NCBI GenBank assembly: GCA_044892505.1
Contig: CM097882.1
Span: 161,696,001-161,760,000 of the forward strand
Direction: 5' to 3'
DNA: 64,000 nt
From: Schmidtea nova
Lineage: Eukaryota
In this document: piece by piece, positions 21,113 to 64,000 of the stretch
Layout of the letters: the number at the start of each line of letters is the position of its first letter
Position numbering within the stretch: position 1 is the stretch's first letter
Made by a program: the position numbers and the translations under genes
Notes under the pieces: model-generated
What the model was told of the DNA's origin: nothing
Databases searched by the model: none
Seen by the model: only the letters and a program-made list of their open reading frames with translations

Positions 21113-22190
21113 TGGTGGGTTGTTGACTGTCAATATGACCTTGACGTTGCTATCGCTCATATCAATAACTTAACATACAAAACCATCTTGTTGTACGTCA
21201 CAATGCAACGTTGGTAATGCAACAAATGTATTTCGCAATTCTATTACATAAAAGTATTCGCAATCAGTGAACGTCGAAAATTTAAAACTATGATTGACCG
21301 AATATCTCCTGGGTCCAAGGGCTACCGATAGAAGGTTTAGTGCCCATTTTTGCCCTTCTACGTTTTTACAATATCTTCTATTAGTTTACACAGATGAATT
21401 TAATTGTCCATATTTTACCCTTAAGATTCTTATGAAACCCGTTTAATCATTTATTCGTTCGCATCATACCAGCCATAACAAGAAAATAATTCAGAATTAC
21501 AGAAAATTTAAAACAATATATGCGAACTACAAAATCATAAATATAATTAACACTGATAACTCAACAAAATAAGTTGTTATCACACAAGTGTAATGTCAAT
21601 TGTCTCGATCGACAATTTGCATAACTGTCCTAGAAGACGCGCTTCTTGTCGACGCTTAACTTCGCGCTCTAACCCCCTTGCTGGGTTTCCAGCGCTTGGC
21701 CTTTACCGGTTGGGAGGTGCTATTATTTCCTCCTTAACCCTCACTGGAAGCAGTTCTTGGGTTGGCAGATTCATTTTTAGCACGACAACCGAAATTATGC
21801 CACTCTCCATCTGCAGTCTTGCGATGGTGGCCTCATTCTCTCGTATGGTGACTGGGTAGGCTCGCAGTCGCATGGTTTCTTCTGCTGCTTCTTGCAGCAA
21901 CATCTGGTTTTGGCGCTGGAGCTTGTCGACGGTCTCTTTATTCGACCAGGTCACCTCCATTTCACGGAAACGGGCTCTGAATTTTTCCATCCTCGATATC
22001 ATTATTCTTAATGCCTCTGCGTTCGCTGTTTTTTCTGTCTTGAGTTTTGCAAAGCACAGGTCAACCAATCGGTTGTGCCTGGGGTTTTCGACGAACATAC
22101 GCAATAGTTCTTCCAACTTTTGATCAAGATTCATTTCTAAAATTTTGTATATGACGTTTAATACGCATTAACTCTAACATTAAATATTTA
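21113..22190 (-). mobile_element. Orphan-ORF TG...CA family, copy C-left (truncated by Gypsy)
   Basis: Terminus TGGTGGGTTGTTGA; about 245 bp match 25503-25738 inverted; carries the coiled-coil ORF 21703-22134. Confidence 0.65.
21703..22134 (-). CDS. Orphan coiled-coil protein (TW-N-E family ORF2); C-terminus RRQEARLLGQL frameshifted at ~21590-21660
   Basis: Aligns by eye with 35931-36317 (RMEKF...TW.N.E...K.Q.Q..ML.....E....LR...I....A.IA.L....GII) and with 24795-25198. Confidence 0.6.
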   Translation of the reverse strand: MNLDQKLEELLRMFVENPRHNRLVDLCFAKLKTEKTANAEALRIMISRMEKFRARFREMEVTWSNKETVDKLQRQNQMLLQEAAEETMRLRAYPVTIRENEATIARLQMESGIISVVVLKMNLPTQELLPVRVKEEIIAPPNR

Positions 22191-22194
22191 ATTA

Positions 22195-24210
22195 TGTAGC
22201 CAAGGGGATAAAGACGAATGACAAGAAGATTAAAGAAATTAAAGATGCAGAGATACCGACATTCGCTAAACAATTGAGGTCGTTCCTGGGTATGACTAAT
22301 TACTACAGGAAGTTCATAAAAGATTACGCAAAGATTGCTGAACCGTTGTACGCAGCCACTTCCGGATGCGGAAAATGATTAATTGGTCAGAAGATTGCAA
22401 TAAAAGTTTTGAATTGCTTAAAACAAAATTATGTGAAGCCTCAATCCTGGATTATCCAAGAGTAGAGGACAAATTTATTCAGGACATAGATGCCAGTTTT
22501 GGAGCCATTGGAGCCGTTCTGTGTCAAGAAAGAGGAGACCATACAGAGGTGGTTATTGAGTATGGGTCAAGATATTTAATGGCACACAAAAAAGGGTATT
22601 GTGTGACAAGGAACGAATTGCTTGCAATACACGAATATGTCTTATATTTCAGACAATATCTATAAGGGAAGACTTTTTTAGTACGAATAGATCACAAAGC
22701 ACTAGACTTCATGAGATACACCAAGAAACCAATAAGCCCACAGTTTACGACATAGCTAGCTGACCTTTCCGGATATGACTTCGACTTACAATATAGGAAA
22801 GGAGAATAACATGGGAATGCAGACGATATCTCAAGGATCAAGGGGATGTTATGAAAAGGGGAGTTATATAAATTGTTGATTGTTTAAATAATCTAAAGAG
22901 AGGTTTATCTTTAATGCCAGACACAACATGAAGACGCGAAAGAGGAAAAAACAAGAGTTAGACATATTAGTATATTACAGAAGACTTAATCAATGACAAG
23001 ACTATTACACATGTCAAGGGTATTACTGGGAAAAGAGAATGGAGAAAATCTGAACAAGAAGAAATTCCCTTTTAATTTGCTGAAGAACACAAAATTTGAA
23101 AACGTATTATTACTGCTTGAGAAAGACGGAAAGGATGTAGTATTAGTACCATTTGACTACACTAATACATTAGTCAAAGATATACATAGAGAAATGTGTC
23201 ATATTGGAGTGAAGAAATTACCAAGTTACATGAGCGATTTATTTTTTTGGCCGAATATGCAAGGAACAATTCAAAGCTGTTTAAGATCATGTGAAATATG
23301 TTGTAAACGGAAGATAGTACAAGAGAAAACAAAGGAACGACTGATACCGATAATGAGTTCAGATTTCTTAGAACAACTGGTTGTAGATATAGCCCACATG
23401 AAATCTCAGGGAAGTTACAGATATTTATTAGTTATTATTGTCCGTTTTAACAAGATGGTTAGCGTAACTGCACTGGAAACACAAGATGAGAAATCGTTGT
23501 TCAAAGCCATATTAGAGAAGTGGATATATAGATTCGGTAAACCACGAAGTATTTTATCAGACAAAGGTAAGAATTTCGACAGCATGTTCGTGAAGACACA
23601 TCTAGCAAAGTTAAGCATCGAACAACACCTGAGCTCACCATACCAACACCAATCGAATGGGCTGGTGGAAAGGACAATACGAACAGTCAGAGACTTATTA
23701 ACAACTTCTATATTCAGTGGATTAGGGGAGAAAATTGGGTAGATTTACTCCCACGTATAGAATTTTGTATCAATGCAACAACACAGAGTACAACAGGATT
23801 CTCACCATTCGAAATTGTTTTCGGGAGGAAAGTTAATCTCCATTCAACACTACCAAACAAATTTGAACGCAACCGAAATACGCAAGCAGGTTCTAGCAAA
23901 CAGTGAAAGAGCAGCAAAACGAATGAAAGAAACAGAGACGCATAGAAGGACGCATAGAACTTTTGAGATAGGGGAAAAAGTATTGGTTCAGAAAGAACCA
24001 CAAAATCGGGACAAAGATGGCCTTCAGTACGACGTTCCGTTCGTAATATCAAGATTTTTGTCAGAACACCAAGTGGAGCTGATCGATGGAGATTCAAAGA
24101 AACTTCGACTTATCGAATGGCTGAAGAGATGGGCAAATCCTTAAAGAAAGGGGGAGTTATATTAATTGTTGATTGTTTAAATAATCTAAAAAGAGGTGTA
24201 TTTTTAAATA
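22195..24210 (+). mobile_element. Ty3/Gypsy pol relic (RT thumb/connection, RNase H, integrase) with PPT
   Basis: LRSFLGMTNYYRKFI; DASFGAIGAVL...ELLAI; HHCC zinc finger (HREMCH...CEIC); integrase VVDIAH / SDKGKNF / SNGLVERTIRT; GPY/F-like tail; purine tract AAGAAAGGGGGAG at ~24145. Stops and frameshifts are present. Confidence 0.92.
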
Positions 24211-24794
24211 AATTATTATCTTGAAATTTATATTTTTAATGAATTCAGAAGGAGACATAACTATGTGAACTAGAAATTATTCTCAGAAAGTTTTCGAGAA
24301 CATAAAGCTGATTGCTATAAAACCTATAAGCTATATTTATGTTGAGTTTTCACTAAAATTCTATTACATAAATGAAAACTTTACTAGTATACATTAATAT
24401 CATTTGAAAAATAAAGCCATACTGCATAATCTTTTAATAAATCAAAAGAAACTCCCAGAGTAATTGTCATAAGAGATAACATCCATAAATTCATATATTT
24501 CCAAAATCTATGAAAGTACACTCAACCGAGAACGAAGGATTGACTCTGCGAATTATTGATGACGATAATACTTCTTTCGTAGCCATCGGCACAAGAGATT
24601 CACGAGATAATCTTTCTTTGAACGATTATTCCTTAGTCGAAAAAAGAATCATAGTTGGAAAAAAGCATAATAAGGGAAAGCATAGCAGAAGATTGAATTG
24701 TTTTCTTTTCACGAAGATGATAAGTTTTTGCTTCGTTTAGAAGGATAGTGTGAGTGGTTGGCTTCAGTGATGCTCTGATGATTTTTGTAGCTGT

Positions 24795-25738
24795 TAGAAA
24801 TAGGAGTCCACGTGGATAAACGTGGAAGGCACCGAAAAGATGCGGAAGCAGATAAAAATGCTGCAAAATCAGGCCGCAGAAGATGCGTTCTAACTTCGCG
24901 CATTAAATATGACAGTCAAGCAACGGGACGCGGAACTCGCCAAACTAAAGATCGACACATGAATCATCGCAGCAGTGAAACCGAAAGTTGAATTCCCCGC
25001 CCTGGAGTTGTTCCCGGTTCGGGTAAGCGACTCATTCTCAACTCAAGTTCCATCAACAGAAGCTGTTGCTGATCGTCCAAAGAAATGGCGACCCAGCTAA
25101 GGAGTGTGTGCCCGTCGAAGACCACGTCAGAAGGCTCGACTTCTGGGGCAGCTCCGGAAATTGTCAGTCGAAACAATTGAATTATCTATCACTGACTAGT
25201 AATAAACATTCGTATTGTGGATCGTGATTTTTGTTGTTATACGTATTGTATTTTAGTGAGTTACTTCTACGTTGAGTGAGTGTGTCGAAGTGTTATTGTG
25301 TCCGTGTGAATGTTACCTAATGATAGTCAGCAAATTACGAAATTTTATTATACGACAAAGACCTTTTGCTCCGACATCTACAGCTAAGCTGTTTGTTAAT
25401 GCTTCGTTATAGATCTTGAGATGAACTTCAGTGACATGATCTTTCCTTCTTGTGATCGTCGTCTAGAACTTCAACAGCGGATTGTAGGATTAATTTTGAA
25501 TTAAGGGAGAAAATGGGCGCGACACCTTCTATCGGTAGCCCTTGGACCCAGGAGATACTCGATCAATCATAGTTTCAAATTTTCGACGCTCACTGATTGC
25601 GAATACCCACCCATTTGTTGCATTACCAACGTTAAATTGTGACGGGCAACAAGATGGTTAATCTAATATTTTGTATGTTGAGTTGTTGATGTGAGCCGTA
25701 ACAACGCCAAGGTCATATTGACGATCAACAACCCACCA
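24795..25738 (+). mobile_element. Orphan-ORF TG...CA family, copy C-right (degraded ORF2 plus terminus)
   Basis: Manual translation ESTWINVEGTEKMRKQIKMLQNQAAEDAF*LR...AELAKLKIDT*IIAAVKPKVEFPALELFPVR...RQKARLLGQL; AATAAA at 25201; ends TCAACAACCCACCA. Confidence 0.7.
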
Positions 25739-26008
25739 TAATGTTTATCTTGCTATGTTAAAATATATTTATGATTTTATTAAAAATTTAATTATTTAAT
25801 GTTTGAAATTTTTCCGCGTCCCTAGCAACGGGTAACAACCAAAATCCCAAAAAAATTAAATAACCATGTTAAAATTTTAATTAAGTTTTTATGACTTCTA
25901 TTTAGACATCTGAATTTTAGATCAATTTTATATTACGAAAAACTAACTACCAGCTAATTTACAGCTGAAGAAAATAATTGGAAATACGTTTTATTTAACC
26001 CCACAATT

Positions 26009-26900
26009 ATGCCACCAAAGCGAAGTGCCATTAGTCGATCTAAAAATCAAGCAAAAAGAGAAGAGAAGAACGAGCTTCAGAAACAAGTGAGCAGAGAGAA
26101 ACTAGGCAAGAAAGAGATCGAGTTCACACTTCTCTTGCTCGATCATTAGAAACGAGTGAACAGAGGCAACAAGGCAGCAAAGAATCGAATTCACAGTACA
26201 CAGAAAATACGAATCCTCTTTACAATTACAGTCTTCATCCAAGTATAATTATTGAAAAAATGGATAAAAAATGTACGTATTGTGGTGCTCAAAAATTTTA
26301 AAATGAAACACCAGGTATGTGCTTGCAGGTGGAAAAGTAAAGTTAACAGACTTGCGTTCACCACCTGAACCATTATTAACTTTATTATCGGGTGAAACAA
26401 GTCAATCAAAACATTTTTTGAAAAATATACGCAAGTGCAATTCATGCTTCCAAATGACATCGTTCGGAACAACGAATATTGTTAGCGCAAATTATATGCC
26501 AACATTTAAAGTACAAGGGCAAATTTATCATCATGCTGGATCACTACTACCCTTGCCAAATGCTGATCACAAATATCTTCAGATATATTTTATGGGAAAT
26601 ACTGACGAACAAATCAACAGACGGTGTCAACTGAATGTGAGTACTAAACGAGAGATTGTTGCTGAATTACAAAATTTGTTTGAACAACATAATGAATTAA
26701 TTAAATTATTTAAAACCGCTATTGAACAAATGCCATCTGAAGATTACAAAGTTATAATAAAGGCAGATAAAACACAACTATTGGTCAACATCGAAGACAA
26801 TTTAACGCACCAACGATCGATGAAGTGGCAATTGTCATAGTTGATGAAGAATTTAATTCTCTCGAAATAAAGTCTTTCCAAATCAAGCATTGAAAGTTCC
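26009..26900 (+). mobile_element. Helitron RepHel N-terminal fragment
   Basis: MPPKRSAI...CTYCGAQKF*NETPGMC..GKVKL...PPEPLLTLLSG...SKHFLKNIRKCNSCFQMTSFG...FKVQGQIYH..GSLLP...LQIYF. Confidence 0.88.
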
Positions 26901-26991
26901 ACCAATGTAATGAATAGAAGAGTGTATATTCGAGCCAAACCAAACATTAAAAGAAAAATTTAACGTACCAATCTTTGATGAAATAGGGAAA

Positions 26992-27600
26992 GTGAAAGAT
27001 AAATCAGTACCAGTTAGAATAGCTAATTGTGGCACAAAATCAATTCAGATGAAACCCAAAAAAAAGTTGGGGAAACTGACAAAAATAAAAGAAGACGAAG
27101 TGCAAAAGCTACCTCGAAACATTAAAATTTATAAAGAACCCAAAATTACAAGTAATGACTTGAAGCAGGTGCAAAAACAAGAATTTACTGCACTACTAAA
27201 GAGATATAAAAATTGTTTGCAAGACATGAGTATGATTTGAAACTTACTAAAATATACACAAAATACCGTTGGTTGACGAAACGCTTATAAAATTACAACC
27301 TTATAGAATTCCATATGTTCATCACTATTATCGTCGTCAATATTAATAGTGAAAAAGAAAGATGGCGACTTAAGATTTTATGTTGATTATAGAATTTTAA
27401 ATAAAGTCACCAAAAAAGACATATCCTATTTCCGTGCCACAAGAAATGTTCGATAAAATAGGAGAGTTGCAATTCTTTACCGTAATCGATTGTAATAAAG
27501 TGTAAAATCAATTCAAAGTCAAGGAAGAAGATAGAAAGAAAACCGCATTTTCAGATGGGAAAGGTCTGTATGAGTTTAACGTATTACCGTTTGGCTTATT
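26992..27600 (+). pseudogene. Gypsy RT N-terminal relic
   Basis: QPYRIP...IVKKKDGDLRFYVDYRILNKVTKKD...KTAFSDGKGLYEFNVLPFGL. Confidence 0.85.
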
Positions 27601-30600
27601 TATTTTGGATTAATTATACGGCATCCGAGATTTGGCCACAGCACAGGTATTTTAAATAATGGGAAGAACTAGAAAGCGAGATTGGTATAAATTGAAAACA
27701 ATAACTCAGGAAATATGCAGAGAGGATACTCAAGTCGGTATTCATCTATCTCTGGAAGATACTAAAACCATAAAGAAGATATATCAACAAGTGGGAAATC
27801 AATGGATAGATGATATAACACCTTCAAAAAAATTCCATCACGAAGATATTCGTTGGAGGAATACAGAAAATTTCGGGATGTTTCATCGTCAATAGAAATG
27901 GTAATATCGGATGAAACTTTTGTTGTTCCAGAAGAAATTGTAACAACAATCAATGGAAATGAGAAGGCGATAGAAGAAAACACGATAATGGATATTGAAA
28001 ATCAATAAATTGAATTCAAATGGGCAAATAAAGTTTTTCTAAAAACACTAGAAGAAAATATTATTATTATCACACCCAACATTACAATTCAAGGGATTAG
28101 ACCCACTTTGGAATATAGACCAATGCCAGAATTCAAACCAAACCGAAAACGTAAAGCCATACTAAACGTGAATATTGGAGAAGGATAAATAAATGGATTT
28201 AGTTATGAATTTAAACGATCAATTTTCATTTACAAACGTTGTTCTGATAAAGTGAAGATAAAAGTGTCATCATCTTTGTGAAAAACAATACAACCAATCT
28301 TCAAACAAGATCCTGCGACAAGTTCAAACTAAATGATAAAATAAAATAAAACTATATCTATATTTATTAGAATAAGTAATTTTGTCTCCTTTGCCTTTAT
28401 CAATATCCTACATGCTATAACCCGAACTAAATAAGATAAAACAATCTTTATTAATAATATGTTATTATTATTATTATTATTATTACTAGTGTGTTACACG
28501 TCAAAAATGACGAAAGTTTTCGAAATAAATATATTTCAGCTGAAATAAAATTAAAAATTTTAAAGTTTTAAGCTTTGTATTATTTCATTTCGAAAAGATA
28601 CATTTTCTATCTATCATTTTAATTTCACGTAGACGAATTTAATTTTTAAAGTAGAAAGTAGTATTATACATCGTTGGATAGCTTTTGAAAAGACGCTTAT
28701 AATACTTTTTGTTTGAGCTTTCTATTATTTAAAATGAGAGATATATAAAAAAATGTAAAAAAAAACTGTCATGTAAAAAAATTCATCAAAATTGGGAATG
28801 AGATAAAATGTACTATACACTGTTGAAAAGCTTTTGAAAAGATCTTTAAAACAATTTTTGTTTGAGCTTTCTATCTTAAAAAATGAAAAAGTTTTGAGTT
28901 AGCGAAAACAGCGTTACACACAAACATACATCGGAAATAATACACCGGTTTTCATCGTTTAAAAAAACTATGATACAAGTAGGTGTGTACAACTACTTGT
29001 TACTCATAGTTACTTTGTTTAATTTTAATTCATTTACTTAGTCATTTATTTTTCATTTAGCCATTTTTTAAAACTGGCTATCAGGTAATTTTATTTATCT
29101 AGATATCTTTTAAGGGTTCTATTTTGATCTTACAATGATATAAGATCACTATAGAAGCTTTGAAAGTTTATCTATATTCTTCAATATTATTTTTATTTTA
29201 TATTTATTAGCGTTTTACAAAATTATGATTTTTTATGAAGTTTTTTTGGAAGTATTTTACATTAAACGTAAGTAAAAATATTTTTTATCAAAAGTTTATT
29301 AATGAAATTAATCAATCTCCCAATATTTGTATTTTATATGTTGTTCTACACTTATTTTTATTTAATTATTAAATACTTTCTAGAAAATCATGATTTTTTA
29401 ACATTTTTTGGGAATTATATTCATTTAACGTAAGTTAAAAAATTATCTTTAAATAAGAATTATTTTTATTTTTGCAAATAATTTTTGGAAATATACGAAA
29501 TTTTATATTAAAATAAAACCCATGATGTTATCTATGCATTTTCTCGATAACTCTCCTATGAAATATTTACCCAAAAATTTATTATAGCCTTTTTAGATGC
29601 GTAAAAATAGCACCCATAAAAGTTTGCATGTAATTTTCATTATGTGTTGTGTATATTTTATTTTTTCTTACAGAATGTCTACCACAGTAAATCTTTAAAA
29701 CTACGAAAAATCAACAGTTAACATCAACGTAAGTTATGATTTGCTATTGGTTATTTATTTTTATATTATAGATACTTTTATCGAACGAAAACAGGTGCAT
29801 GTTCACTGAATAAGAATATTAGCATTTAATAACCCGTTATTGAGATGTACTCTGCATTAAAATATTTCACATTCTTTTACTTATTACATTCTCGAAGTTT
29901 TATTAGCAAAATACAGTATAAGCAATTAAGACATGTTTTAAAGAGAACAATTTAAGAAGCTGTCGTTTATAATATTTATAAAAACAGGCTGAATATACTG
30001 CTTATAAAAATTTGCTGAATTATGAAGATAATATTTAATGTAATAAATACATTATAGATTGAAACAAAAAACAATTATTAAAAATTACAACTAAAATGTT
30101 GCGATTCAAAAATTAAGACAAATAAGTAGAACATGTATTTTCAACTTTCTCGTAAATTCACTATCACATTAGATATATCCAGAAATCTTTCTTTCGAAAA
30201 TACTCAACTTTCACAAAATCTTGCAATTTACTAACACCAACTTATACAAACTAGTTAGCAAATGCTATATATCATAAAAATCTACAACAAGCAACCTGCG
30301 AAAATCCTCATTCCAAATAACTTTCCGTAAATCAAACAGGTTAGAAAAACTGATAAGCCCCAACCAATGAATATCAAAATTCAGCACCACTATATTAACA
30401 AAACATTGGTTGAATCTCTAGGAATGTTTAAACACTCCAATTGTTATGATCAAATAGGTCGTGATTATAAACTTCAAATATCATTAATCACACAATCATT
30501 AATCGAAAGGGTTCACGTAATTAAAAACAAATGTAAATGCTTAAGGTAAATTTACAAATAAGGGTAAAACAAAATTTCAAAATTTAACCAGACCCAATTG

Positions 30601-30847
30601 ATAGATCTAAAAACCGATTATTTTCAAACATTGTTCCGAAATAAGCACATAAAATATTCAAATAGCTCTCACAATTTTCAAAACTTACAATTATTTTCAA
30701 CACACACACACAGAGAAATTTTAAACTAACACTTTTCGAAAAATTATGGATTAACTTTAATAATAAATCAATCTAATTAAATTCAGTTGATAATTGAGTC
30801 AAATAATTTAGCGTATACTGTTACTGTACAAAAGCACCGGTATGTTG

Positions 30848-32377
30848 TCAATGTCGCTGATTCTGCTGAGGCGTTGGCCGCTGAGAATATACATTGTAAT
30901 CAATTCGGGCAGATTGAGTCGTTATGGGCTTCATACTTGGGGCGGATTTGGCATTTGCTGTCATGATTGACGAAGTGGCGTTACTAACGGGGGCAATAAT
31001 TTCATTGGTACTTTCGATGTCTAATAATTGACCTTCACCTCTGGCCAATACATCTCTGATTCTTGTGTCAAGTTCATTTTCATTTTGATATTCCGCAACA
31101 TATAATCTTTTATCTATATGTTTTGGAATAGCTTTAATTTCAGTATTCAATTGCGTTTCAATATTTTTTAATGCAAATCTATCATCATATGTGATTAAAT
31201 TAACAGCCACTCCTAAATGACCATATCGGCCCGATCGACCAATTCTATGTAGATATGTTTCGGCATATTTTGGAAAATCAAAATTAATCACAACGTTTAC
31301 TGATGGTATGTCTATACCCCTTGTAAATAAATCCGTACAAACCAAATTTCTACAATTTCCATTTCTAAATTCATGAAATACTCTATTTCTATAAACTTGA
31401 TTCATTTTAGCGTGAATATAATAACATGAGTAACCGAGATCCGTTATTTTTTTTGCTAATAATTCAACTCTTTGAGCAGTATTGCAGAAAATAATAGACT
31501 GATTAATTTGCAAACGAGAAAAAAGGGTATTTAAACAGTGGACTTTTTGACGCTCTTGAACATATGCATAATATTGTGAAATTCCTTTTAATGTTAGCTC
31601 ATCCATTAAATTAATTTCATACGGATCTCTCATGTGCTTTTCTAGAAATTGTTGAACAGATTGTGGAAATGTTGCAGAATACAACATAATCTGACGCTGA
31701 GCAGGTAATTTACTGATAATATAATCAATTACTTCTTCAAAATCTGCTGATAATAATTTGTCAGCTTCATCAATGACTAATATTTTACAAAAATTTGTGG
31801 ATACAATATCCCGTTTAATTAAATCATTAACGCGACCAGGAGTGGCTAAAATTATATGGACAGTTTGTTGGAGCCTAACAATATCATCCTTTAAACTTGT
31901 GCCACCCGTAGTAACCATTATCTTAGTTTCTGTGTGTTTAGCAAGTTCTGTACAAATTTGACTAGTTTGTAATGCTAATTCTCGAGTAGGAACTAAAATT
32001 ATTCCTTGGATTTGGTTAATGCTAGGGTCTATTTTTTCTAATAGTGGAATAGAATAAGCACCTGTTTTACCGGTTCCATTTTTAGCTCTGGCGAGAATAT
32101 CGCGACCGATTAATGAAATAGGAATGCTAGCTTCTTGAATAGGTGAAGGCATCTCCCATCCTTTTTCATAAATGCCTTTTAGTATATCTCGTTTTAGACA
32201 AAAATCGTCAAAAGAATTGCCTTGGGTTGCTGTTACATCAACCGTTTTAATACGATTATCTTTTTCAGGAATCTTAAGGTAGTTTTTCCATAATGCTTGA
32301 TCACTTTGTGTGTTAGATACACTGTCCCCACCTTGAATATTCATATTGACGTTGTTTCTATTCATAACTAAAATCAT
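30848..32377 (-). CDS. DDX6: DEAD-box RNA helicase DDX6/Me31B/Dhh1, intronless CDS
   Basis: [55 protein letters not shown]; 509 aa uninterrupted. Confidence 0.97.
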
Positions 32378-33096
32378 ACAAATATATAATGAAATTCAAA
32401 TATTTAAAAAACCGACATTTCTTTGTGTTACAAATACAATTTCGAAAACGAATCAATCAGATTTAAACAAATACAAAATATAAACAATGGAGATACATTA
32501 TACTAATCTTTAAATAATGTTATTTAATTTAATTAAATTAAAAAACTAAATTTATTCAATTGAAAATAAAACTTATAAAGAAAATTCTAAATTTTTAAAT
32601 AATTATTTTAGTTAATTATAGATTGCATTATACATTGCATTATAATAATTTATGAAATCATTAAAGAACTAAAAATTTAATTTATTTTTGTTTAAAAATT
32701 TCTAAAAAGATAAAATAAATTAAAATTTATTTATTTTTAATTTCATTAGAATAAGACATTAACAATATAATCTTTTGATAGTCACATATTATAAAAGTAA
32801 TTACAAGTAGAAATGCTGTTTTGTATTGAAAGAAATTTACAATCTCACTTTAAAAATTTTTAATAATACAAAAAATAATTTAAACCTACCAAAAAATTAA
32901 GTAATATGTATACCGGATTTAACATATATACACTAATATTATTATGCAACCAACCATAAAGTTCAAATATTCTTTACTGATTTATGAAATTCAACATAAT
33001 GTTGGGCTGAGGAAACCGAAAATAAATTCTGTTTAAATTTATCAAAAATTAAATATATACAAAAGGGAACAAGTTTAAAAAACGCACGATAAAGCT

Positions 33097-33594
33097 TTAC
33101 GCAGTAAGATAAGGCAAAAGAAAATAAAACAGTAAAGTATAAAAGTAATCATATGAACCGCATTCTATAAGTCGGTCGAGATAGTGCTTAAACGATAAAA
33201 AAGGCATCTCAAAAGAGAGCCCACAATTTGAGTGCAGGCAGTAATTATACGAAACAGCTGTTCGCATTTCTGCGTCTGCCCTTCGTTGAGGAACCCAACG
33301 CTCAAAATTATTGGTCCGGATCTGGTCCCGTAAATGCTGCTTGATAAACTCGTTAGTCATCGCCCGCATGCATCGGTTCAATTCTGTTTTAGAAGCCGAT
33401 AATTCCGTAGCTTGATCGTCTAATGCCTGCCTTGCCCTGTCTCAACTGGTCAAGACCTCCTTCATGGCTGCCGGACTGAACCACGTTCTCCGCAGCTCGT
33501 ACATCTCTAACTCCTGGTGTTTCAATTTTCCTTCAATTCGTCGCCGCAACTGTCGGGTGTCATCGGTGTTTACTAATTCACTGAGGCTTTCCAT
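33097..33594 (-). pseudogene. ORF2 of element A (one internal TGA at 33442-33444)
   Basis: MESLSELV...LRRTWFSPAAMKEVLTS*DRAR...TNEFIKQHLRDQIRTNNFERWV aligns with 38288-38872 (LKTTWFNPERVKSILQARYRA...TQEFITQQLRPLIRTSTFNRWV). Confidence 0.75.
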
Positions 33595-33836
33595 CTAAAT
33601 GCAGATCATGAGAGAACGTGAAATATTTAGGTTTGAAGCAACATGGTTATGCGACTACCGACTCTCATGACTCTCACCACACTCTTAGACTATTTTATGC
33701 ACTCATCTCTTTCCCTCATTCGATCATCATACACTTCAACTCGTCAAATTCGGAAGAAAACAACAAGTCGATTTATTTATCACTCAAAACACATTCGAGA
33801 TAATTGTCGTTACTAGTGCGTGATCAAAGCTTTGTC

Positions 33837-34482
33837 TCAATGTTCGTACATCCACTCCTGCGAGAAATTACTGCCCTCCTTTCCGATACCATCTGATGAA
33901 TAGAATTCCGGATTAGGCTTCCAGCATAGATTTCCATTATACAGGAAAATCTCTCGAAAGGTAATCGTTGCGGCCCAAGGGGATCGTGCTCTCCACTCGG
34001 TTTGAAATCCTTCTGGTATATTAGAATAATCGGTTTCCTCGCACGTACGGACATTACGAGACTTATCCAATGTGATATACCCGAGTCGGTTCAGTGTCAA
34101 CACATCAATAGGTTGGAAGAAACACCAGCCATCTCGGAGTGCTGGTTTTATCGGTCAGTTCAATAAACCATCTCGGAGGGTTATGCGCGCGAGTCTCACT
34201 TTCGCTTGGCCATCGTGGTTCACCTTCCCAGATGACCTCACTGTTCGTCTGATTTCTCATACTAAAACAGGCGGCTTGCTGGAACTCCTTTCTTCAGTGC
34301 CTAGTGTGTCGATTTATTTTGTCTTGGATTGGTATCGGAACCTGTGGTTTAAATCGTGAACTTCCGGGCACGATCTTCTTGGAATTGACCCGATGGGTCC
34401 GGTGCCTCCCAAAGGTTTTCTTTTTATCAACCACATTTGTTTTCATTTGTCTACATAGAGGAAAATAAATGCATTTAATCAT
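33837..34482 (-). pseudogene. ORF1 of element A (stop plus frameshift)
   Basis: WEGEPRWP...PPRWFIELT...PRWL...LGYITLD...YNGNLCWKPNPEFYSSDG matches element B WEGDTKWP...PPNWFLQMT...PRWI...LGYILMD...YQDKLVWDPCPEIYLSDG. Confidence 0.75.
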
Positions 34483-35799
34483 GGAAACAATTAATTAGGG
34501 GAAGATTCCATCAGTCCTCGTGATTTATTCACATCTCACTCATCAATAACCTCAACATCAAACTACTCCCCCTTGTCATGCATACTTTACCCAAATAATT
34601 CGAACGTCCCAACATTCAGTCATTCTTCGTGTATCAACTCATTTTCACGCTTTAGTTCATTCCGTCAATCGTCCATCATTTAGCTGCATCTATTCTCCAT
34701 ACATTCATGTTGGGTTATTCCTTTCCACCACTCATCCACAGCTCATTCGTCCCTTCCTTTCTCAACCATTCGGTCTATTCGGAAAAATTGTCTCTAGATC
34801 GTTTCGGTTACTTTAAACATCAATATCATATATACGTCTGAGTTCCCTTCATCATTCTTCTGGTTACGGATATCCAGACAATCGTCATAGTGTCATTCAG
34901 TTGACAAGCCGTTCATCCTCAGCTCACTGCATTTGGGTATGTCTTTCATACTTTACTACTTTATTTCTGGCAGACAAACAATGACCCATGTACAATCCCC
35001 TCCCGTCATTAGCAATGGTAAGCCGCATAATTTGCCCGTCGGGACGTGCTCCTAGTGAACTTTACGAAAAACATGAAGGTTTACGAATAATCAAAGCACA
35101 ATAACAATGCATACCTTTATTTCTGCCGTATCAATTCACAAATGATTCAAGCTCAGTTACACTGTAAGATGCACTTGGTAATCAGAGTGTACAGGTAATA
35201 CCAGTAAAAGGTATTAAAGGTATATATCAGGTATATCTCTTGCTGAAAATAACCGCTGTTTATATACTAGCTTGGCTTCCTATTTCAGTCAATCAGGATG
35301 CTTCTACCACTCTGACAATGATTTGTATTTATTTTTAAATGGTTGTCTTTGTGTGTTTATATGGCTATTTTTTCTAGTAATTTATTAATTTGGTTTATAT
35401 TGATTTGTGTTTTTGGTCTGTGACATGTTCAAGTGTCACTTGAGTGGTTGACTCATTTGCTCAGATATTTTTTTTCAAGTGGTAAGTTTATGTTTTATTA
35501 TTCATCAATTGTTATTTTTTCAGGCTTCAGCGATTTCAATTGATTTTATGCTGGTGCATAGTAATTCTACTATTATTTGTTAATTTATGTTTTTATTTTC
35601 AGCATAATTTATATTTTGCTTAGCCCAACAAGAGTAACCGAAGCAAAATGTCTTTATCACTCAATAAGTATTCCATGGTTTACCGATTTCGTTGTATCAT
35701 CATCCAAACAGTCACGATATCAGTCAATCAATCCATTCAAACTTTAAAATAACTAGGTACGTACAATACATATAATTAAAAGTAGACAAGATGAACAAA

Positions 35800-36400
35800 A
35801 ATATATATACATGAATTACAATAACATTGTCGGATTCAATCTTCGGTCGACAAATCGATCGTTTCTGTCCTCGCACCAAGCAATTGGTCCAAGAGTCTTG
35901 CTTCCTGGCACCGTTTTCGTCGGGCTTGTACTATTTTACTCGGCCTCCATTTTTCGGTCGGTCAGTAGTTGAATTGGGTATTGGTCCTTGTGTCGGCATT
36001 GTCTCTCCAGCCCGTATTGGAAATAACTCCAATGCGGAGAATTCAACTTTCGGTTGTAGCGCCAAAATGATACCGGCATCGATCTTCAGCTGAGCGATCT
36101 CCGCGTTCCCAGTTTTTATTGCCATTTTCACCACGCGCAGTTGAAGTGCATCTTCGGTGGTCTGATCTTGTAGCATTTTGATTTGTTTTTGCATCTTCTC
36201 GGTACCTTCTACATTTGTCCATGTAGACTCCAATTTTCGACACCGAGAACTAAACTTTTCCATTCGTTCTGTCATCACTCGGAGCTCTTCCCAGAGGAGC
36301 TTCCTATCCTCCTCCATTTCTGCGACGCGGGATGTTAGATGTCTCTAACTCCAATTCATTTTGGTCATCTGGGCCATCATTTTTAACTTTAAATTTAACT
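35800..36400 (-). pseudogene. Orphan coiled-coil ORF2, copy D (35931-36317 plus C-terminal CQEARLLDQL)
   Basis: Homologous to 21703-22134 and 24795-25198; cut upstream by the Polinton-type terminus at 36595. Confidence 0.65.
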
Positions 36401-36952
36401 CTTTTCATTTTGCTCATTCATACTTATCAGTCACTAAAATTTTTTCGACATCACCACTCGATTCGAGGGTCTAATTCTCAGTAAAATCATTCACGTTTGG
36501 GCATATTTATTCATTGGCAATTTTAAATCTGATTGCTTATTAATTTTATGAATTTTGAATTAAATGTGAATTAAATTCCAGTCCTAGTGATCTCAGTAGG
36601 AAGAAGTGAGCTCACGATGACTCATGAAACAAAGACATTATGCGTCATACATGACCCTCGCCCCGATGACTCATTTTAAACAAAGACTATGACTCATCGA
36701 TGACTCATTTCAAATTTGAATTTTATAACGTCATCGATGACTCATTTCAAATTCAAATTTCAAATTTAAATTTCCAAAGGTCTTGAAGAGGTCTATACAA
36801 TGTTCATACCCTCGAGGGTTTATGGAGGGTCCTAAACCTTCAAAGGGTTAAAAACCTTCAACCTTTTCCCATCCTTATAATATACATAACATTCGAAATA
36901 TAATTGAACGGTGAGTATGATGGTCATACCTTTAAAGATGTATGGTGAGTGC

Positions 36953-37251
36953 CAGTGGCGTACCAAGGATTTCTGGGGCCCTTGTGCAGATTTTAGGACG
37001 CACAAAATATTTGTCGAACGAAGTGATCCGAGGAACCAACTATATCCAATATAGATTCCTAATAATATTAAATGTATAAACCGTCCAAACTGTGGTTGCT
37101 GTCTTAATTAAAAACAAAACAAACGCCCAAGCGATGCTTGGTTTGATGACAATCGGGGAATTTATAATGCTCGAACGTATAAAATTTACTACTTTTTCGT
37201 CCTGGGCCCTTGTGCCGTGCACAACCTGCACAACCTATTGCTACACCACTG
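36953..37251. mobile_element. hAT-type MITE
   Basis: Termini CAGTGGCGTA / TACACCACTG; imperfect 8-bp TSD GTGAGTGC/GTGGGTGT. Confidence 0.75.
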
Positions 37252-37421
37252 GTGGGTGTTCAACCTTCAAAGGGTGCAAAACCTTCAACCATTTCAAACC
37301 TTGTGTGTAATATATCAAACAAAAGGTAATTGAGATGTGCATACAACTGTCATACCCTCGAAGGTGTATGGTGGGTCCTGAACCTTCAAAGGGTGCAAAA
37401 CCTTCAACCTTTTTTCAAACC

Positions 37422-37492
<71 letters not shown>

Positions 37493-37595
37493 TTCGAAAG
37501 GTATCTGAGAGGTTGGTATGTTGGTTACACCCTTGAAGGTCTATGGTGGGTCAATAACCTTCAAAGGGTGCAAAACCTTCAAATTTTTTCAAACC

Positions 37596-37654
<59 letters not shown>

Positions 37655-38287
37655 TTCGAAAGGTATTTGAGAGGTAGGTATGTTGGTCACACCATCGAAG
37701 GTTTATGGTAGGTTAATAACCTTCAAAGGGTGTCCAAAATTAAATATTTTTCAAACTTTACAAGTTATATATCACTCAAAAGGACTTTTGATGGTGAGTA
37801 GGATGGTCATACCCTACAAAGGTTCAAGGTTCAAAAATTTTAAAAGCTTATAATATACATATCAAATATAAGGTATTTGTAATGTAAGTATTGCTGGTGT
37901 GTTGGTTAGATGGACAACTGAGATCATTTGGATTTTATACGTTAGGGTGATCTCTCCAACATAAAAACATATCCCCGCTGACACCCATGATGTATCCCTA
38001 ACTACTCATCATGTTGGTGCTGTGTCAACGTTGTGAAATGACAAGGCAGGTGAGCAACCTTGCGGCTACTATTCCCTTGTTTATTCACGGGTCCACCACT
38101 ACCGATAGAAGGTCTATGTGGATTTCATTCGGTCCCTCTATAATGCGCTCCTTTACTCATTCTAGGGTCAACTCAATTTCGGGGTACCTGTAGCACAAAA
38201 TGAATCGGTTTAATTTACTTTGCTCTTAATTTTTCAAACATACCACAGACAAACAAATCAAGTTGATCAACTATTATACATTTATTT

Positions 38288-38872
38288 TCAGTTCAAGAAT
38301 ACAGACGGGTTGATCACCTCCATCAACTGTTTTTCGGTGAGTCCGCTCAACAAGTCCATTTCAATGCCTAGTCGTTCGGCATACGCTCGGCGCTCGCGTC
38401 GTTTCTTCGCCCCTAAGCGAATTCGGCGCTTTGTCCGCTTTGAACCTTCCACTGGCTTCACTATCTCTGAAGTGGTCGTCGTAGGACTAGACTCTGCCTC
38501 CGCATGTGTACTGGTCGACATTGACGTCATCTCCACCCAACGGTTAAACGTACTAGTCCGGATAAGCGGGCGCAACTGCTGAGTGATGAATTCCTGGGTG
38601 GATGCTTTTAGGTAGTTATGCAGCTCTAGCTTAACTGCGGCCACCTCCCTCGTCTGCTCCTCGGCTATCCGCTCTGCTCGGTATCGGGCTTGTAATATCG
38701 ACTTGACCCGTTCTGGGTTAAACCAAGTGGTTTTGAGGCGCTGATATTCCTCGTTTAATTGGCGCAATCGGCTCTCTAGAACCCTGGAGCGGGCTTTCTG
38801 TTCTCGGGCCTCTCTCCGGTAGTTACGATTATTATCGGGGTTCATATCTAAATAATTATGTTGGTAATTCAA
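38288..38872 (-). CDS. ORF2 of element B, intact orphan coiled-coil protein with basic C-terminus (194 aa)
   Basis: Open frame conserved with element A ORF2; basic tail KRTKRRIRLGAKKRRERR. Confidence 0.7.
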   Translation of the reverse strand: MNYQHNYLDMNPDNNRNYRREAREQKARSRVLESRLRQLNEEYQRLKTTWFNPERVKSILQARYRAERIAEEQTREVAAVKLELHNYLKASTQEFITQQLRPLIRTSTFNRWVEMTSMSTSTHAEAESSPTTTTSEIVKPVEGSKRTKRRIRLGAKKRRERRAYAERLGIEMDLLSGLTEKQLMEVINPSVFLN

Positions 38873-39065
38873 ATTATGTTTGGATCACAAATTCGTGCTT
38901 CCCTTCCCCTTCAGTTTTGTTAGATTATTACCGCTAATCGTCCTGAATTTTTTCACATCCTTCATTCATACTCAGTCATTCGCATACAATCAAGTCATAA
39001 TAAGAAGAACCATTTCACAAAATTTTATTTCCTTCACATCGGATCGGGGTCACAATATCTCCTTC

Positions 39066-39731
39066 TCAGAAAAAAGGCCGGATCTCTTGATCAAGATGTC
39101 GATCCTCTCGTCTTCGGCCATCCGACAGGTAGATTTCCGGACACGGATCCCAAACGAGTTTGTCTTGGTAAGTGGATACCTCCCATAGTCTGAGTTCGTC
39201 GGGTTCCAGGTTCTGTTCCGCGGGCATACCTCCGGGTGCATGTTAGTAGGGTTGGATTTCCCCAGTGTCGCTACACCGAGGCCTATCCATGAGTATGTAT
39301 CCAAGCTTAAAGAACTCTGGGCCGGTGATCGAGGCATCACATAGGATCCATCGGGGTTGACCTGCATCATTGGTCATTTGCAGGAACCAATTCGGGGGCG
39401 TCTTGTGCGATCGGTTCGCGGCCATCGGCCATTTCGTGTCTCCTTCCCACCGGAGTTGAGTTGAAAAGGAACAGGACGGCACCTTGGCAGCGACATTGGT
39501 GTAACGTCGGTTCCATCGACGAAAGTGTCTACTGGCCTCTTGAATGACGGACTTCGGAGCATCCGTTAACCCTCGGAGTTCCATCTTGGGCGTAGTAATC
39601 CGAGGTCTCGGAACCGTCTTTCCATGGGTTGTTCCTGATCTCGCTCTGAATAAACCGCTATGGCATGATGATTTCGGTGGCAATTTGACAGTCGGATTCC
39701 GCGTCATCGTCCTGAATAATTTGCTTTTCAT
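39066..39731 (-). pseudogene. ORF1 of element B (~221 codons, one in-frame TAA at 39243-39245)
   Basis: The frame continues past the TAA with residues conserved against element A (Y...L.W.P.PE.Y.SDG). Confidence 0.7.
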
Positions 39732-41719
39732 TTTATTATTATGACTTTAAAATCAATTGCACGCATCTTTATTGTCACCAACATCTGCGTTGATTTGAAT
39801 TCAATCGGTGTAGGTGTAGATTACCTACTGAGTTCACCCGTTGCTGATCAGATCAGTGAGTCGTACCAGAGTTTGTAGATAGTATATTGATCTCGACTAT
39901 TCACGCATGATGATATTATTTTTAACTCGTTTAATACTTCAATCAACTCTTGTCAACACATTCAGGCATAATCAATCCATTTCAGAACCATTCTCGTCAC
40001 GCATTTATCATCATTCTCTGCATCATACTCAACTAACGATGACCACACTCCTTAAGACAATTTTATGTCGAGACTCAGTGATCTCCGGTTCCCATAAGTA
40101 GCTTACATATGATAATGACAGGGTATGTTGGGATATTAATTCTCTAGCTGCAGCTCTCGTAGCTATTATTGGTTATCGTTACTCTACTGGAACGTGACCT
40201 CTAGATCGATTCGCGATATCCCATGTGCACTCTCCTTCCGATAAACTCAATTTAAGAAACCTAGGGTCTCGCCGCATCAGCACCTCATATGAAAATATGT
40301 TGTGCCGAGAGGCCGAGAATCCCGTCAGACCGTTAGGCCTTCGGGACGATCCTTATTGATTTTAATATTATTATGAGGGTTTAAATTCGATAAAAACAAA
40401 ATTAACAATACCTTTTATTTCGATTCCAAGTTTCGTATACAAACTTCAAAATTTCAGTAAGTTGTCAGTTCTCAACTGCAAATTACACTTGGTAAAAATA
40501 GTGACTGGTAAAAAGTGACCCTCATACTGATTTTGCTTCAGTATTTATACTAAATTGGTGTTGTTGGCCGGCCAATCAGCATCGAGTATGTGTGTATTTA
40601 TTGCTACTCATTTATGTTCGCCAGTCTTTCTGTATAATTTAATTCAGTAAGTTGTTTATTTAACCATGCGTTAATTCTTTGTTATAATTTATTTTTTTTT
40701 AGATGCTCGGTGATGTCCGCCCACGTCCTGTCATATTTTCAGCTTACCTGATTCGCATGGGTGAATTTTTATTGTTACTTTATTTTGATTTATTCTTTTG
40801 TTGTTTTCAGATTCTGCCGCGTATTGCTGACTTATTTGATGACGGTAATTGATTTTTGTTGTTGTTTTTATGTAAATTTATTTCATTGATTTTATATTAC
40901 TTTTCAGATGATGACTGATTTGCCTGGCCCAACAGTATCATGGTCATACTTCAAAGGTTAATGGTGGGTAATGAACCTTCAAACCTTTAAAAACCTTCAA
41001 GGGGTCCAAAATCTTTAAAACTATATAGTATATGTTTAATAAATATATCAAAGTAAAGGTAATTCGAAGGTTTTGTATGATGGTCATATAAAGGGTCCAA
41101 GGTTCAAATTTTTAAAACTATATAATATGTATATCGAACAAAAGCTAATTGACAGATGAGTATAAGAGATGGTGTGTGTGTGTTCGAAAATATTTTTCTA
41201 CCAGTATTTTAAAAAATTTCCTACCCCAATTGCAACAAAGACATTGCAATACAGATGCAAGTTAACAAAGACATTTCAATGCCAAAATCCTTAACAAAGA
41301 CATATCAATGCCAAAATAACTAAACAAAGACATTTCAATGCCAAAATTCCTTAACAAAGACATTTTAATGCCAAAATAATTCTACAAAGCCAATTCAACG
41401 CCAAATTCCTTAACAAAGACATTTTAATGCCAAAATAATTATACAAAGACAATTCAATGCCAAATTCCTTAACAAAGACAATTCAATGCCAAAATAACTG
41501 TATAAAGACATTGTAATACCAAAATACCTTAACAAAAACATTTCAATGACAAAAACCTTAACAAAGACATCTCAATGCCAAAATTATTTACCAAAGACAA
41601 TTCAATGCCAAAAATCTTAACAAAGACATTTCATTGCCAAATTCCTTAACAAAGACATTGCAATGTAGATGTAAGTCAATAAAGACATTGCAAGCCTGAT
41701 TAACAAAGACATACATGCA

Positions 41720-43190: not shown

Positions 43191-43204
43191 ATAATACGAT
43201 ATAA

Positions 43205-54400: not shown

Positions 54401-54516
54401 AAACATAAAAAACATAAAATTTTACAAAACATTTTTTCAAAAACACAAAGTGAGAATTAATCAACATTTATTAATAAATACACATATATATATATATGAC
54501 AACAATGTTATTCCAA

Positions 54517-54960: not shown

Positions 54961-55187
54961 TTTATGAACAATTCTATTTTTGTTTTCTTATTTATACTCG
55001 TCATCGTCTGTGTGCAGCCAATCAGATTCTTGCACATGTCTTGTAAATCAATTGCACATGTCTTGCTAATCAATTGGCTATGTATTAATAATTGACTTTG
55101 TATACATGTTGATGATTATCTACTGCAATTTCTTTCTATATATGTTGTAAGTTATTTACATATCTATCGCAATTTTATTGTCTATCC

Positions 55188-55256
<69 letters not shown>

Positions 55257-59763: not shown

Positions 59764-59809
<46 letters not shown>

Positions 59810-63999: not shown

Positions 64000-64000
64000 A

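What the first reader, a model, noticed from the sequence alone, without database searches (positions are those of the whole stretch)
21113..40934. Five-copy family of TG...CA-bounded units encoding conserved orphan proteins and no mobilisation enzyme
Seen: elements A (33000-35630) and B (37892-40934, 4-bp TSD GTAT) each carry ORF1 (Trp/Pro-rich: WEG..WP, PP.WF, PRW, LGYI, W.P.PE.Y.SDG) then ORF2 (coiled coil with TW-x-[NS]-x-[EA]) on the minus strand. Three partial copies (21703, 24795, 35931) carry a more distant ORF2 subfamily. Protein motifs are kept while the DNA looks highly diverged, which implies past purifying selection. Known: TG...CA ends with a 4-bp TSD typify Gypsy LTRs and also Ginger DNA transposons. 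Inference: giant solo LTRs whose U3 encodes antisense accessory proteins, or a new non-autonomous integrase-mobilised element class. I recognise neither protein.
Basis: partly seen in the sequence, partly recalled or inferred. Interest (0 to 1): 0.85.

Follow-up and report, generated by a model that had tools for sequence, protein, structure and literature searches.

The report
Planarian retroelement LTRs carrying orphan genes
The flagged units are most likely leftover long terminal repeats of planarian Gypsy-type retroelements that carry one or two selection-shaped protein genes of unknown family inside the repeat itself, an uncommon but not unprecedented arrangement.

Summary
The window comes from a dugesiid planarian: its DDX6 gene is 95% identical to the Dugesia japonica protein. 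Unit B (37892-40934) is a true insertion. It has TG...CA ends and a GTAT duplication of a site that occurs once in intact satellite units. Unit A (33000-35630) has 9-bp inverted ends but no duplication. A and B share two minus-strand genes that match only at protein level and only in the gene frames. Three fragments carry a diverged ORF2-like gene, with pN 0.13 against pS 0.75 between two of them. No enzyme domain lies in any unit. ORF1 and ORF2 have no relative in Pfam, PDB or the protein libraries searched; those libraries seem to hold no planarian genome. Best reading (0.55): solo or fragmentary LTRs of long-LTR Gypsy retroelements, in the size range reported for Burro elements, carrying an accessory gene cassette. 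Four clues point that way: a shared CCAAT/TATA block, poly(A) signals, an A-rich strand, and one fragment lying downstream of a pol end and polypurine tract. No paired copy around gag-pol could be examined. New variant of a known kind; moderate interest.

The parts
37892..40934 (-). Unit B: complete insertion, 3043 bp, TG...CA ends, GC 43% against about 30% in the flanks. Strand given is that of its genes.
37888..37891 (.). Left copy of the 4-bp target site duplication GTAT of B
40935..40938 (.). Right copy of the target site duplication GTAT of B
39066..39731 (-). B ORF1: basic, Pro/Ser-rich N-terminal part followed by a Trp-rich domain. Broken by 1 in-frame stop.
38288..38872 (-). B ORF2: intact, 194 aa, pI 10.2. 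Predicted antiparallel helical hairpin with the TW motif at the turn, then a Ser/Thr linker, an Arg/Lys-rich helix and short C-terminal helices.
40542..40576 (-). B promoter-like block on the gene strand (ATTGG, CCAAT, TATAAATA), about 385 nt from the high-coordinate end. Conserved in A.
38281..38286 (-). AATAAA directly after the ORF2 stop of B. A second AATAAA lies at 38080-38085.
38099..38113 (+). Exact 15-mer shared with the terminal fragments at 21322-21336 and 25524-25538
40647..40907 (+). Three intron-like stretches of 50-63 nt (GT...T-rich...AG) on the strand opposite the genes
33000..35630 (-). Unit A: 2631 bp, perfect 9-bp inverted ends, no target duplication, older and more decayed
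33837..34482 (-). A ORF1: broken by 1 stop and at least 1 frameshift
33097..33594 (-). A ORF2: broken by 1 stop
35259..35296 (-). A promoter-like block (ATTGA, CCAAG, TATATAAA), about 365 nt from the high-coordinate end
35482..35602 (+). Two intron-like stretches of 42 nt on the strand opposite the genes
21113..22194 (-). Fragment c21113: terminus plus ORF2-like gene (21580-22134, 1 stop). Abuts the truncated Gypsy pol.
24167..25738 (+). Fragment c25738, a candidate 3' LTR. It runs from TGTTGATTG after the polypurine tract, through the ORF2-like gene (24710-25199, at least 5 stops and probably 1 frameshift), to the terminus. Its left boundary is uncertain.
35631..36610 (-). Fragment c35931: ORF2-like gene (35836-36317, 1 frameshift) with an upstream CCAAT/TATA-like block. 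Neither terminus is present.
22195..24144 (+). 5'-truncated Gypsy pol fragment (RNase H and integrase domains, several breaks), followed by a polypurine tract at 24145-24156
36764..37887 (.). Satellite of about 160-175 bp that B inserted into. It resumes at 40939-41150.

Best explanation
A and B are solo LTRs. The three partial copies are LTR fragments of a related one-gene lineage. All would derive from planarian Ty3/Gypsy-type retroelements with unusually long LTRs, in the Burro size class.

Shown: B was inserted by a cut-and-join reaction that leaves TG...CA ends and a 4-bp duplication. The units hold no enzyme. Their genes diverged under purifying selection.

Inferred: a retroviral-type integrase supplied by a full-length element inserted a provirus, and LTR-LTR recombination later removed its interior. 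Each LTR holds its own small transcription unit on the element's sense strand. That unit is a CCAAT/TATA promoter about 370-390 nt from the LTR start, a long leader, ORF1 (A and B only), ORF2, then a poly(A) signal and a 200-500-nt terminal stretch. A provirus would therefore carry the cassette twice, and a solo LTR would keep it.

Both proteins are strongly basic. ORF2 looks like an oligomerising helical hairpin followed by an arginine-rich helix and a short hydrophobic/acidic tail. I therefore guess it is a nucleic-acid-binding regulatory or accessory factor of the element, similar in logic to retroviral accessory proteins. ORF1's Trp-rich domain is of unknown fold.
For: - Host: a dugesiid planarian. 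Such genomes hold thousands of Gypsy elements, including giants whose LTRs bring 25-kb interiors to over 30 kb (PMC6431247).
- Insertion signature: TG...CA ends, a 9-bp inverted repeat in A, and a verified GTAT duplication for B.
- No internal direct repeats in A or B and no Pfam domain in any open segment.
- Coding constraint: only the gene frames match between A and B. Codon-phase identity is pos2 > pos1 > pos3, against a flat control. c35931 against c24795 gives mismatches of 18/5/36 by codon position and pN 0.125 against pS 0.753.
- Sense orientation: a conserved CCAAT/TATA block on the gene strand in A and B. AATAAA follows ORF2, and none lies on the other strand near its exit. The non-coding parts are A-rich on the gene strand, like the pol sense strand.
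- The c25738 fragment lies downstream of a pol stop and polypurine tract, with its gene in pol's orientation. TGTTGAT at its candidate start mirrors ATCAACA near its end.
- Small introns on the opposite strand can only persist through retrotransposition if that strand is antisense (inference).
- ORF2 fold. Charge.
Against: - No full-length element with two such LTRs, and no primer-binding site next to any end, is in the window.
- No planarian reference LTR could be fetched, so 'LTR' rests on signature and size.
- A 10-nt spacer separates the polypurine tract from the TGTTG start. A 62-nt copy of that junction also sits inside pol, so the left boundary of the candidate 3' LTR is unsure.
- c21113 lies inverted against the same pol fragment, which no simple model explains.
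- A lacks a target duplication and the terminal 15-mer.
- Promoter, poly(A) and splice signals are motif matches only.
- ORF length alone is barely beyond chance.
- The protein functions are guesses: no homolog, and no usable ORF1 model.
Confidence: 0.55

Rival explanations
1. Same solo LTRs, but: the element's sense strand is the plus strand, and ORF1/ORF2 lie antisense inside U3. Sense transcription would leave through the high-coordinate end.
For: Five of the window's 12 plus-strand intron-like stretches cluster in the last 150-290 nt of A and B, so a spliced plus-strand transcript probably crosses that end. The ends of A, B and a third repeat at 45192 all read ...GCCCAACA. That could be a conserved U5 end next to a primer-binding site.
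Against: The plus strand has no AATAAA between the putative start and the end. Its TATA matches are weaker than the TATAAATA / TATATAAA on the gene strand. Constitutive small introns in a sense R-U5 would be lost on copying. Strand composition and the pol/polypurine-tract adjacency point the other way.
Confidence: 0.2
2. A and B are complete non-autonomous elements rather than LTRs. They would be two-gene units with integrase-recognised ends, inserted in trans by a Gypsy integrase.
For: B is a single TSD-flanked unit. The genes were kept under selection across diverged lineages. No partner LTR or interior is seen in 64 kb.
Against: Solo LTRs look exactly like this. No route is evident by which a unit without LTRs, primer-binding site and polypurine tract would be copied. 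The related fragment sits downstream of a pol end. The size matches reported giant-element LTRs.
Confidence: 0.12
3. Non-autonomous Ginger-type cut-and-paste DNA transposons.
For: TGT...ACA ends and a 4-bp duplication.
Against: The terminal inverted repeats are only 9 bp (A) and about 6 bp, offset (B), not tens of bp. No DDE integrase remnant is present. Conserved accessory genes are not expected in deletion derivatives.
Confidence: 0.05
4. The ORFs are not genes: they are chance open frames in repeat DNA, and the protein matches merely reflect DNA homology.
For: ORF lengths are only marginally longer than in shuffles. All copies but one are broken. No homologs were found anywhere.
Against: There is frame-specific conservation without DNA-level similarity, a codon-phase pattern absent from the control, and pN/pS of about 0.17.
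Confidence: 0.05

Closest known systems
Solo LTRs of Ty3/Gypsy (Metaviridae) retrotransposons, especially the giant Burro/GYPSM1 elements of Schmidtea (PMC6431247)
   Same: TG...CA ends with a short inverted repeat, a 4-bp duplication, no enzyme inside, kilobase size, a planarian host, and accessory ORFs as a theme of these elements.
   Different: Ordinary LTRs are non-coding. Coding LTRs are not mentioned in the Burro account I could read. Identity with any Burro LTR could not be tested because no reference was reachable.
Retroviral genes lying in or overlapping the LTR (MMTV sag in U3; spumavirus and lentivirus 3' accessory genes reaching into U3). From my own knowledge.
   Same: A protein-coding sequence inside the repeat in sense orientation, so it is duplicated at both ends. 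A possible separate promoter for accessory genes.
   Different: No sequence or fold similarity. Here there are up to two whole genes, apparently with their own promoter and poly(A) signal inside the LTR, in a Gypsy-type element of an invertebrate.
Antisense retroviral genes driven from the 3' LTR (HTLV-1 HBZ). From my own knowledge.
   Same: The intron-like stretches on the strand opposite the genes suggest a spliced antisense transcript leaving the LTR. ORF2 combines a coiled coil with a basic region.
   Different: HBZ is coded outside the LTR. There is no similarity in sequence, and ORF2 did not match bZIP in Pfam.
Ogre elements of plants (PMC6431247)
   Same: Very long LTRs (1.9-6.5 kb) and extra ORFs of unknown function.
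   Different: Ogre's extra ORFs lie in the interior, not in the LTR. The host kingdom is unrelated.
Ginger DNA transposons
   Same: TGT...ACA ends and a 4-bp duplication.
   Different: The inverted repeats are too short, and there is no integrase gene or remnant.

Membership tests
LTR of a Ty3/Gypsy retrotransposon (solo LTR) | TG...CA termini with a short terminal inverted repeat | tested here: met
   A has a perfect 9-bp repeat. B has TG...CA and shares its last 8 nt with A.
LTR of a Ty3/Gypsy retrotransposon (solo LTR) | 4-6-bp target site duplication | tested here: met
   B: GTAT on both sides, present once in intact satellite units. Not met for A.
LTR of a Ty3/Gypsy retrotransposon (solo LTR) | Occurs as direct pairs around gag-pol, with a primer-binding site after one copy and a polypurine tract before the other | tested here: inconclusive
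   No pair is in the window. One fragment follows a pol stop and polypurine tract after a 10-nt spacer. No primer-binding site was seen.
LTR of a Ty3/Gypsy retrotransposon (solo LTR) | Promoter and poly(A) signal in one orientation inside the repeat | tested here: inconclusive
   Motif matches on the gene strand are conserved between A and B. There is no expression data.
Burro / GYPSM1 giant planarian Gypsy elements | Sequence identity of the unit with a Burro LTR | not testable with these tools
   No planarian repeat library or genome is in any reachable collection. Only size and host fit.
TRIM / LARD non-autonomous LTR elements | Two direct terminal repeats around a non-coding interior | tested here: not met
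   No direct repeats lie inside A or B.
Ginger DNA transposons | Terminal inverted repeats of tens of bp and a DDE integrase gene (in autonomous copies) | tested here: not met
   The inverted repeats are 9 bp or less. No rve or other enzyme domain lies in the units.
Known gag / ORF1p / retroviral accessory protein families | Significant profile or fold match | tested here: not met
   Pfam: none. PDB by sequence: none. Foldseek against PDB and BFVD: none with E<=0.001. Protein libraries: none.
Penelope-like elements | Hammerhead ribozyme motifs in the terminal repeats; RT and GIY-YIG genes | tested here: not met
   Rfam finds nothing in the window at gathering scores, and there are no such domains.

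The most novel reading that the evidence does not exclude
The LTRs of a planarian endogenous-retrovirus-like lineage are self-contained gene cassettes. Each would hold its own promoter, two orphan basic proteins and a poly(A) signal, plus a spliced antisense transcript leaving the LTR. Every solo LTR scattered through the genome would then remain a potential expression unit for retroelement regulatory proteins, and ORF2 would act as an oligomeric RNA-binding regulator.
Probability: 0.3. Interest if true: 0.65.

Novelty: new variant of a known kind. Interest (0 to 1): 0.45.

Why it matters
Planarian genomes are crowded with Gypsy-type elements that are de-repressed in specific tissues when PIWI is lost (PMC8532177), yet their long LTRs have been treated as non-coding. 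If these LTRs encode conserved proteins, three things follow. The accessory-gene repertoire of invertebrate retroelements is wider than annotated. Solo LTRs could be a dispersed source of expressed basic proteins and of new host genes. The arrangement would also be an invertebrate Gypsy parallel to LTR-embedded genes of vertebrate retroviruses. If they prove to be ordinary solo LTRs with dead ORFs, the locus is a routine transposon nest.

Tried and rejected
**Searches that found nothing**
- Exact look-up of seven window proteins.
- Word-index searches with ORF2-B and with the first piece of ORF1-B.
- An exhaustive HMMER profile search of ORF2 against 1.84 billion representatives.
- Two metagenome scans.
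- These blanks are weak evidence. The same libraries return no planarian copy of the window's DDX6 except one UniRef entry from D. japonica.
- PDB sequence searches, and Foldseek against PDB and BFVD.

**Models and alignments that failed**
- The AlphaFold model of the ORF1 piece has pLDDT 38 and was not used.
- I did not fold or search ORF1 as a whole. The tools take no read-through by reference, and I did not type letters.
- MAFFT stacked the gene pieces on top of each other, so no full-length profile of ORF1 or of the ORF2 subfamily could be made.
- Profile comparison of the two ORF2 subfamilies is weak.

**Literature**
- The Grohme et al. 2018 genome paper is not held. Literature searches for coding LTRs found nothing.

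**Models rejected**
- An inversion of one element as the origin of the inverted fragments around pol: their genes are only about 38% identical.
- Nested insertion of A into c35931: no duplication and no continuation on the other side.
- Penelope, DIRS, LINE and Helitron readings: wrong ends, no ribozymes, no matching domains.

- The pieces I sent to tools end at breaks. No break position is written in the notes or in this report.


Full report
**Setting**

The window is AT-rich (GC 16-46% in 2-kb bins). It holds satellites, transposon debris and seven N runs, which I left untouched. An intronless DEAD-box gene at 30848-32377 (minus strand) is 95% identical over 99% of its length to the Dugesia japonica DDX6-type helicase. 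The next hits are 75% or less. The source is therefore a dugesiid planarian other than D. japonica itself.

Published accounts describe such genomes as over 70% A/T and full of Gypsy elements (PMC11410931). These include giant Burro elements, whose interiors of up to 25 kb exceed 30 kb once the LTRs are added. Those elements have been argued to be integrated proviruses (PMC6431247).

**Checking the observation**

- **Unit B** (37892-40934) begins TG and ends CA, with GTAT on each side. It sits in a satellite of about 160-175 bp. Aligning its two flanks separately against intact satellite units shows a single GTAT at that position in the intact units. The duplication is real, and B is a discrete 3043-bp insertion. 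Its GC is 43%, well above its surroundings.
- **Unit A** (33000-35630) has perfect 9-bp inverted ends, and its last eight bases equal those of B. Its flanks are not duplicated.
- **No DNA match, but a protein match.** A and B give no nucleotide match at E<1e-5. Translated comparison of every open segment of 20-42 kb against the window finds them similar only in the two minus-strand gene frames:
  - ORF2: 36.5% over 104 aa, E 2e-15.
  - ORF1: 24-42% over 33-78 aa.
- **The three further copies** (near 21703, 24795 and 35931) share an ORF2-like gene at 39-58% identity.
- **No mobilisation enzyme.** No open segment of any unit matches a Pfam family, so this claim holds.

**Are the ORFs genes?**

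ORF length alone is weak evidence. Dinucleotide shuffles reach the longest open segment of B in 6 of 300 trials and that of c21113 in 4 of 300. The pattern of divergence is the stronger evidence.

| Comparison | Measure | Result |
|---|---|---|
| c35931 vs c24795 (frame-blind blastn) | mismatches by codon position | 18/75, 5/75, 36/74 |
| c35931 vs c24795 | pN / pS | 0.125 / 0.753 (saturated) |
| A vs B, ORF2 (frame-blind MAFFT) | identity by codon position | .52 / .60 / .37 |
| A vs B, ORF1 C-terminal core | identity by codon position | .53 / .63 / .35 |
| A vs B, ORF1 N-terminal core | identity by codon position | .45 / .53 / .40 |
| A vs B, non-coding control | identity by codon position | .52 / .52 / .52 |

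The lineages that produced these copies therefore diverged under purifying selection on both proteins.

The copies themselves are decayed:

| Copy | ORF1 | ORF2 or ORF2-like gene |
|---|---|---|
| B | 1 stop | intact |
| A | 1 stop and at least 1 frameshift | 1 stop |
| c21113 | no ORF1 | 1 stop |
| c35931 | no ORF1 | 1 frameshift |
| c24795 | no ORF1 | at least 5 stops and probably 1 frameshift |

**One family or two?**

Profile comparison of the A/B ORF2 with the three-copy subfamily is weak (P 0.009 over 27 columns). Even so, three features occur in the same order in both:

- the TW-x-[NS]-x-[EA] motif;
- a basic stretch;
- a short C-terminal motif of the form L-[SG]-[IVF]-E-[TM]-x-x-L.

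In addition, B and both terminal fragments share an exact 15-mer about 210 nt from the same terminus (3 hits, 0.08 expected) and similar terminal bases. I accept distant homology. The picture is of two-gene units (A, B) and a one-gene relative, which in the window is present only as fragments.

**What the proteins look like**

Neither protein has a relative in any library I could search:

- Pfam;
- PDB by sequence;
- the word-indexed protein search;
- an exhaustive profile search of 1.84 billion representatives;
- two metagenome scans.

These blanks are weak, because the libraries evidently lack planarian genome proteins.

AlphaFold models ORF2-B as two long antiparallel helices, with pLDDT above 90 over about 90 residues and the TW motif at the turn. 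After these come a short helix, a disordered Ser/Thr-rich linker, an Arg/Lys-rich helix and small C-terminal helices. Foldseek finds nothing meaningful in PDB or BFVD. Both proteins are very basic, with pI 10.2 and 10.6. The ORF1 piece gave a useless model with pLDDT 38.

**What the units are**

Several features together are the signature of a solo LTR left by LTR-LTR recombination of a Gypsy-type provirus:

- TG...CA ends with a short inverted repeat;
- a 4-bp duplication;
- no internal direct repeats;
- no enzyme domain;
- selection-shaped genes that the unit could not use to move itself.

The size of 2.6-3.0 kb fits the LTR length implied for giant planarian elements.

Within the window there is only one link to an interior. 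A 5'-truncated Gypsy pol fragment (22195-24144, plus strand) carries RNase H and integrase domains. It ends in a stop, followed by a 12-nt polypurine tract, a 10-nt spacer and then TGTTGATTG. From there the sequence runs without an obvious break through the c24795 gene, in pol's orientation, to the terminus at 25738. The bases just inside that terminus mirror the TGTTGAT start. This makes 24167-25738 a candidate 3' LTR.

That boundary is not secure, for two reasons:

- The spacer is unusual.
- A 62-nt copy of the same junction sits inside pol.

The c21113 fragment lies inverted against the truncated side of pol. Its outer 245 nt are 78-91% identical to those of c25738, although their genes are only about 38% identical. 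This could reflect local gene conversion between nearby inverted copies, or a conserved terminal region.

**Orientation**

Four observations favour the gene strand being the element's sense strand:

- A and B share a block of ATTGG/ATTGA, CCAAT/CCAAG and TATAAATA/TATATAAA on the gene strand, about 365-385 nt from the high-coordinate end.
- In B, AATAAA follows ORF2 at once, and a second copy lies about 190 nt from the low-coordinate end. The opposite strand has none near its exit.
- The non-coding parts of A and B are A-rich on the gene strand (AT skew +0.18, and +0.40 in B's first 400 nt). The pol sense strand is similar at +0.21.
- The pol/polypurine-tract adjacency described above.

There is also a fifth, ambiguous observation. 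Of 12 plus-strand matches to a short-intron pattern in the whole window, five lie in the last 150-290 nt of A and B, on the strand opposite the genes. A spliced transcript probably crosses that end. Small constitutive introns should survive copying through RNA only if they are antisense to the genomic RNA, so I read this as support for the sense model, with an added antisense transcript. I put sense at about 0.7 given that the units are LTRs.

Whether the genes lie in a very long R region, or in U3 upstream of a second start near the conserved 15-mer, cannot be told without transcript ends.

**How it most likely works**

- Shown: insertion with a 4-bp duplication; past selection on both genes; no enzyme inside the units.
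- Inferred: a full-length element's integrase inserted a provirus whose two LTRs each carried the cassette. Recombination then left the solo LTR. The cassette's own promoter and poly(A) signal allow expression from any LTR.
- Guessed from composition and the ORF2 model: ORF2 is an oligomerising, basic, probably nucleic-acid-binding accessory factor. ORF1's role is open.

**Comparison and novelty**

As mobile DNA, these are members of a known kind: Gypsy-type LTRs of a planarian. What is unusual is whole, selection-maintained genes inside the LTR. From my own knowledge, parallels exist in vertebrate retroviruses (MMTV sag; accessory genes reaching into U3). I found none described for planarian or other Gypsy-type elements in the papers I could search. 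I rate the finding a new variant of a known kind, with moderate interest. The central claim, that these are LTRs of a full-length element, is untested outside this window, and the families may already sit unnamed in curated planarian repeat libraries that I could not reach.

Noticed in passing
window 54500-64000 (minus strand): A Polinton/Maverick-like element. It has a 976-codon open segment that looks like protein-primed DNA polymerase B (my reading; Pfam gives only a weak Endonuclease_7 hit), an adenovirus-type cysteine protease (PF00770, E 9e-6), and a 427-codon open segment that could be a capsid protein.
   Followed up: partly
window 30848-32377 (minus strand): An intact, intronless DDX6/Dhh1-type DEAD-box helicase gene, 95% identical to the Dugesia japonica protein. 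It identifies the host as a dugesiid planarian and lies only about 600 bp from unit A.
   Followed up: yes
window 22853-22914 and 24146-24207: A 62-nt stretch holding the polypurine tract and the bases after it occurs twice at 92% identity: once after the pol stop, and once inside pol between the RNase H and integrase regions. It may be a central polypurine tract with extra duplicated sequence, or a rearrangement.
   Followed up: partly
window 35482-35602 and 40647-40907 (plus strand): Five short intron-like stretches (42-63 nt, GT...T-rich...AG) cluster at the same end of A and B on the strand opposite their genes. Only 14 other such matches occur on both strands of the whole window. This is unexplained without RNA data.
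   Followed up: partly
window 45192-45990 (minus strand): Another GC-richer repeat ends in the same eight bases as A and B (GCCCAACA) and holds internal short repeats. It may be a truncated LTR of a related Gypsy lineage.
   Followed up: no
window 42971-43264; 43205-43396 and 43717-43908: A hAT transposase dimerisation-domain fragment (PF05699, E 3e-9) lies next to a 192-bp inverted repeat with 99% identical arms.
   Followed up: no
window 52415-52731 and 53513-53829: A 317-bp direct repeat (97% identical) whose first copy starts at an N run. Each copy includes the 3' end of the 221-aa ORF at 52973-53638. This could be a tandem duplication or an assembly effect at the gap.
   Followed up: partly
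window 1-451 and 41234-41712; 560-2736; 15473-16958: Large satellite arrays. The array with a period of 30/59 bp occurs at both places in opposite orientation.
   Followed up: no
window 7265-7696 (minus strand): An open segment with a mitochondrial carrier repeat (PF00153, E 2e-5), probably an exon of a host gene.
   Followed up: no
window 26307-26837 (plus strand): A 177-codon open segment that reminded me of the N-terminal domain of Helitron proteins. Pfam did not confirm it, so it stays unassigned.
   Followed up: partly
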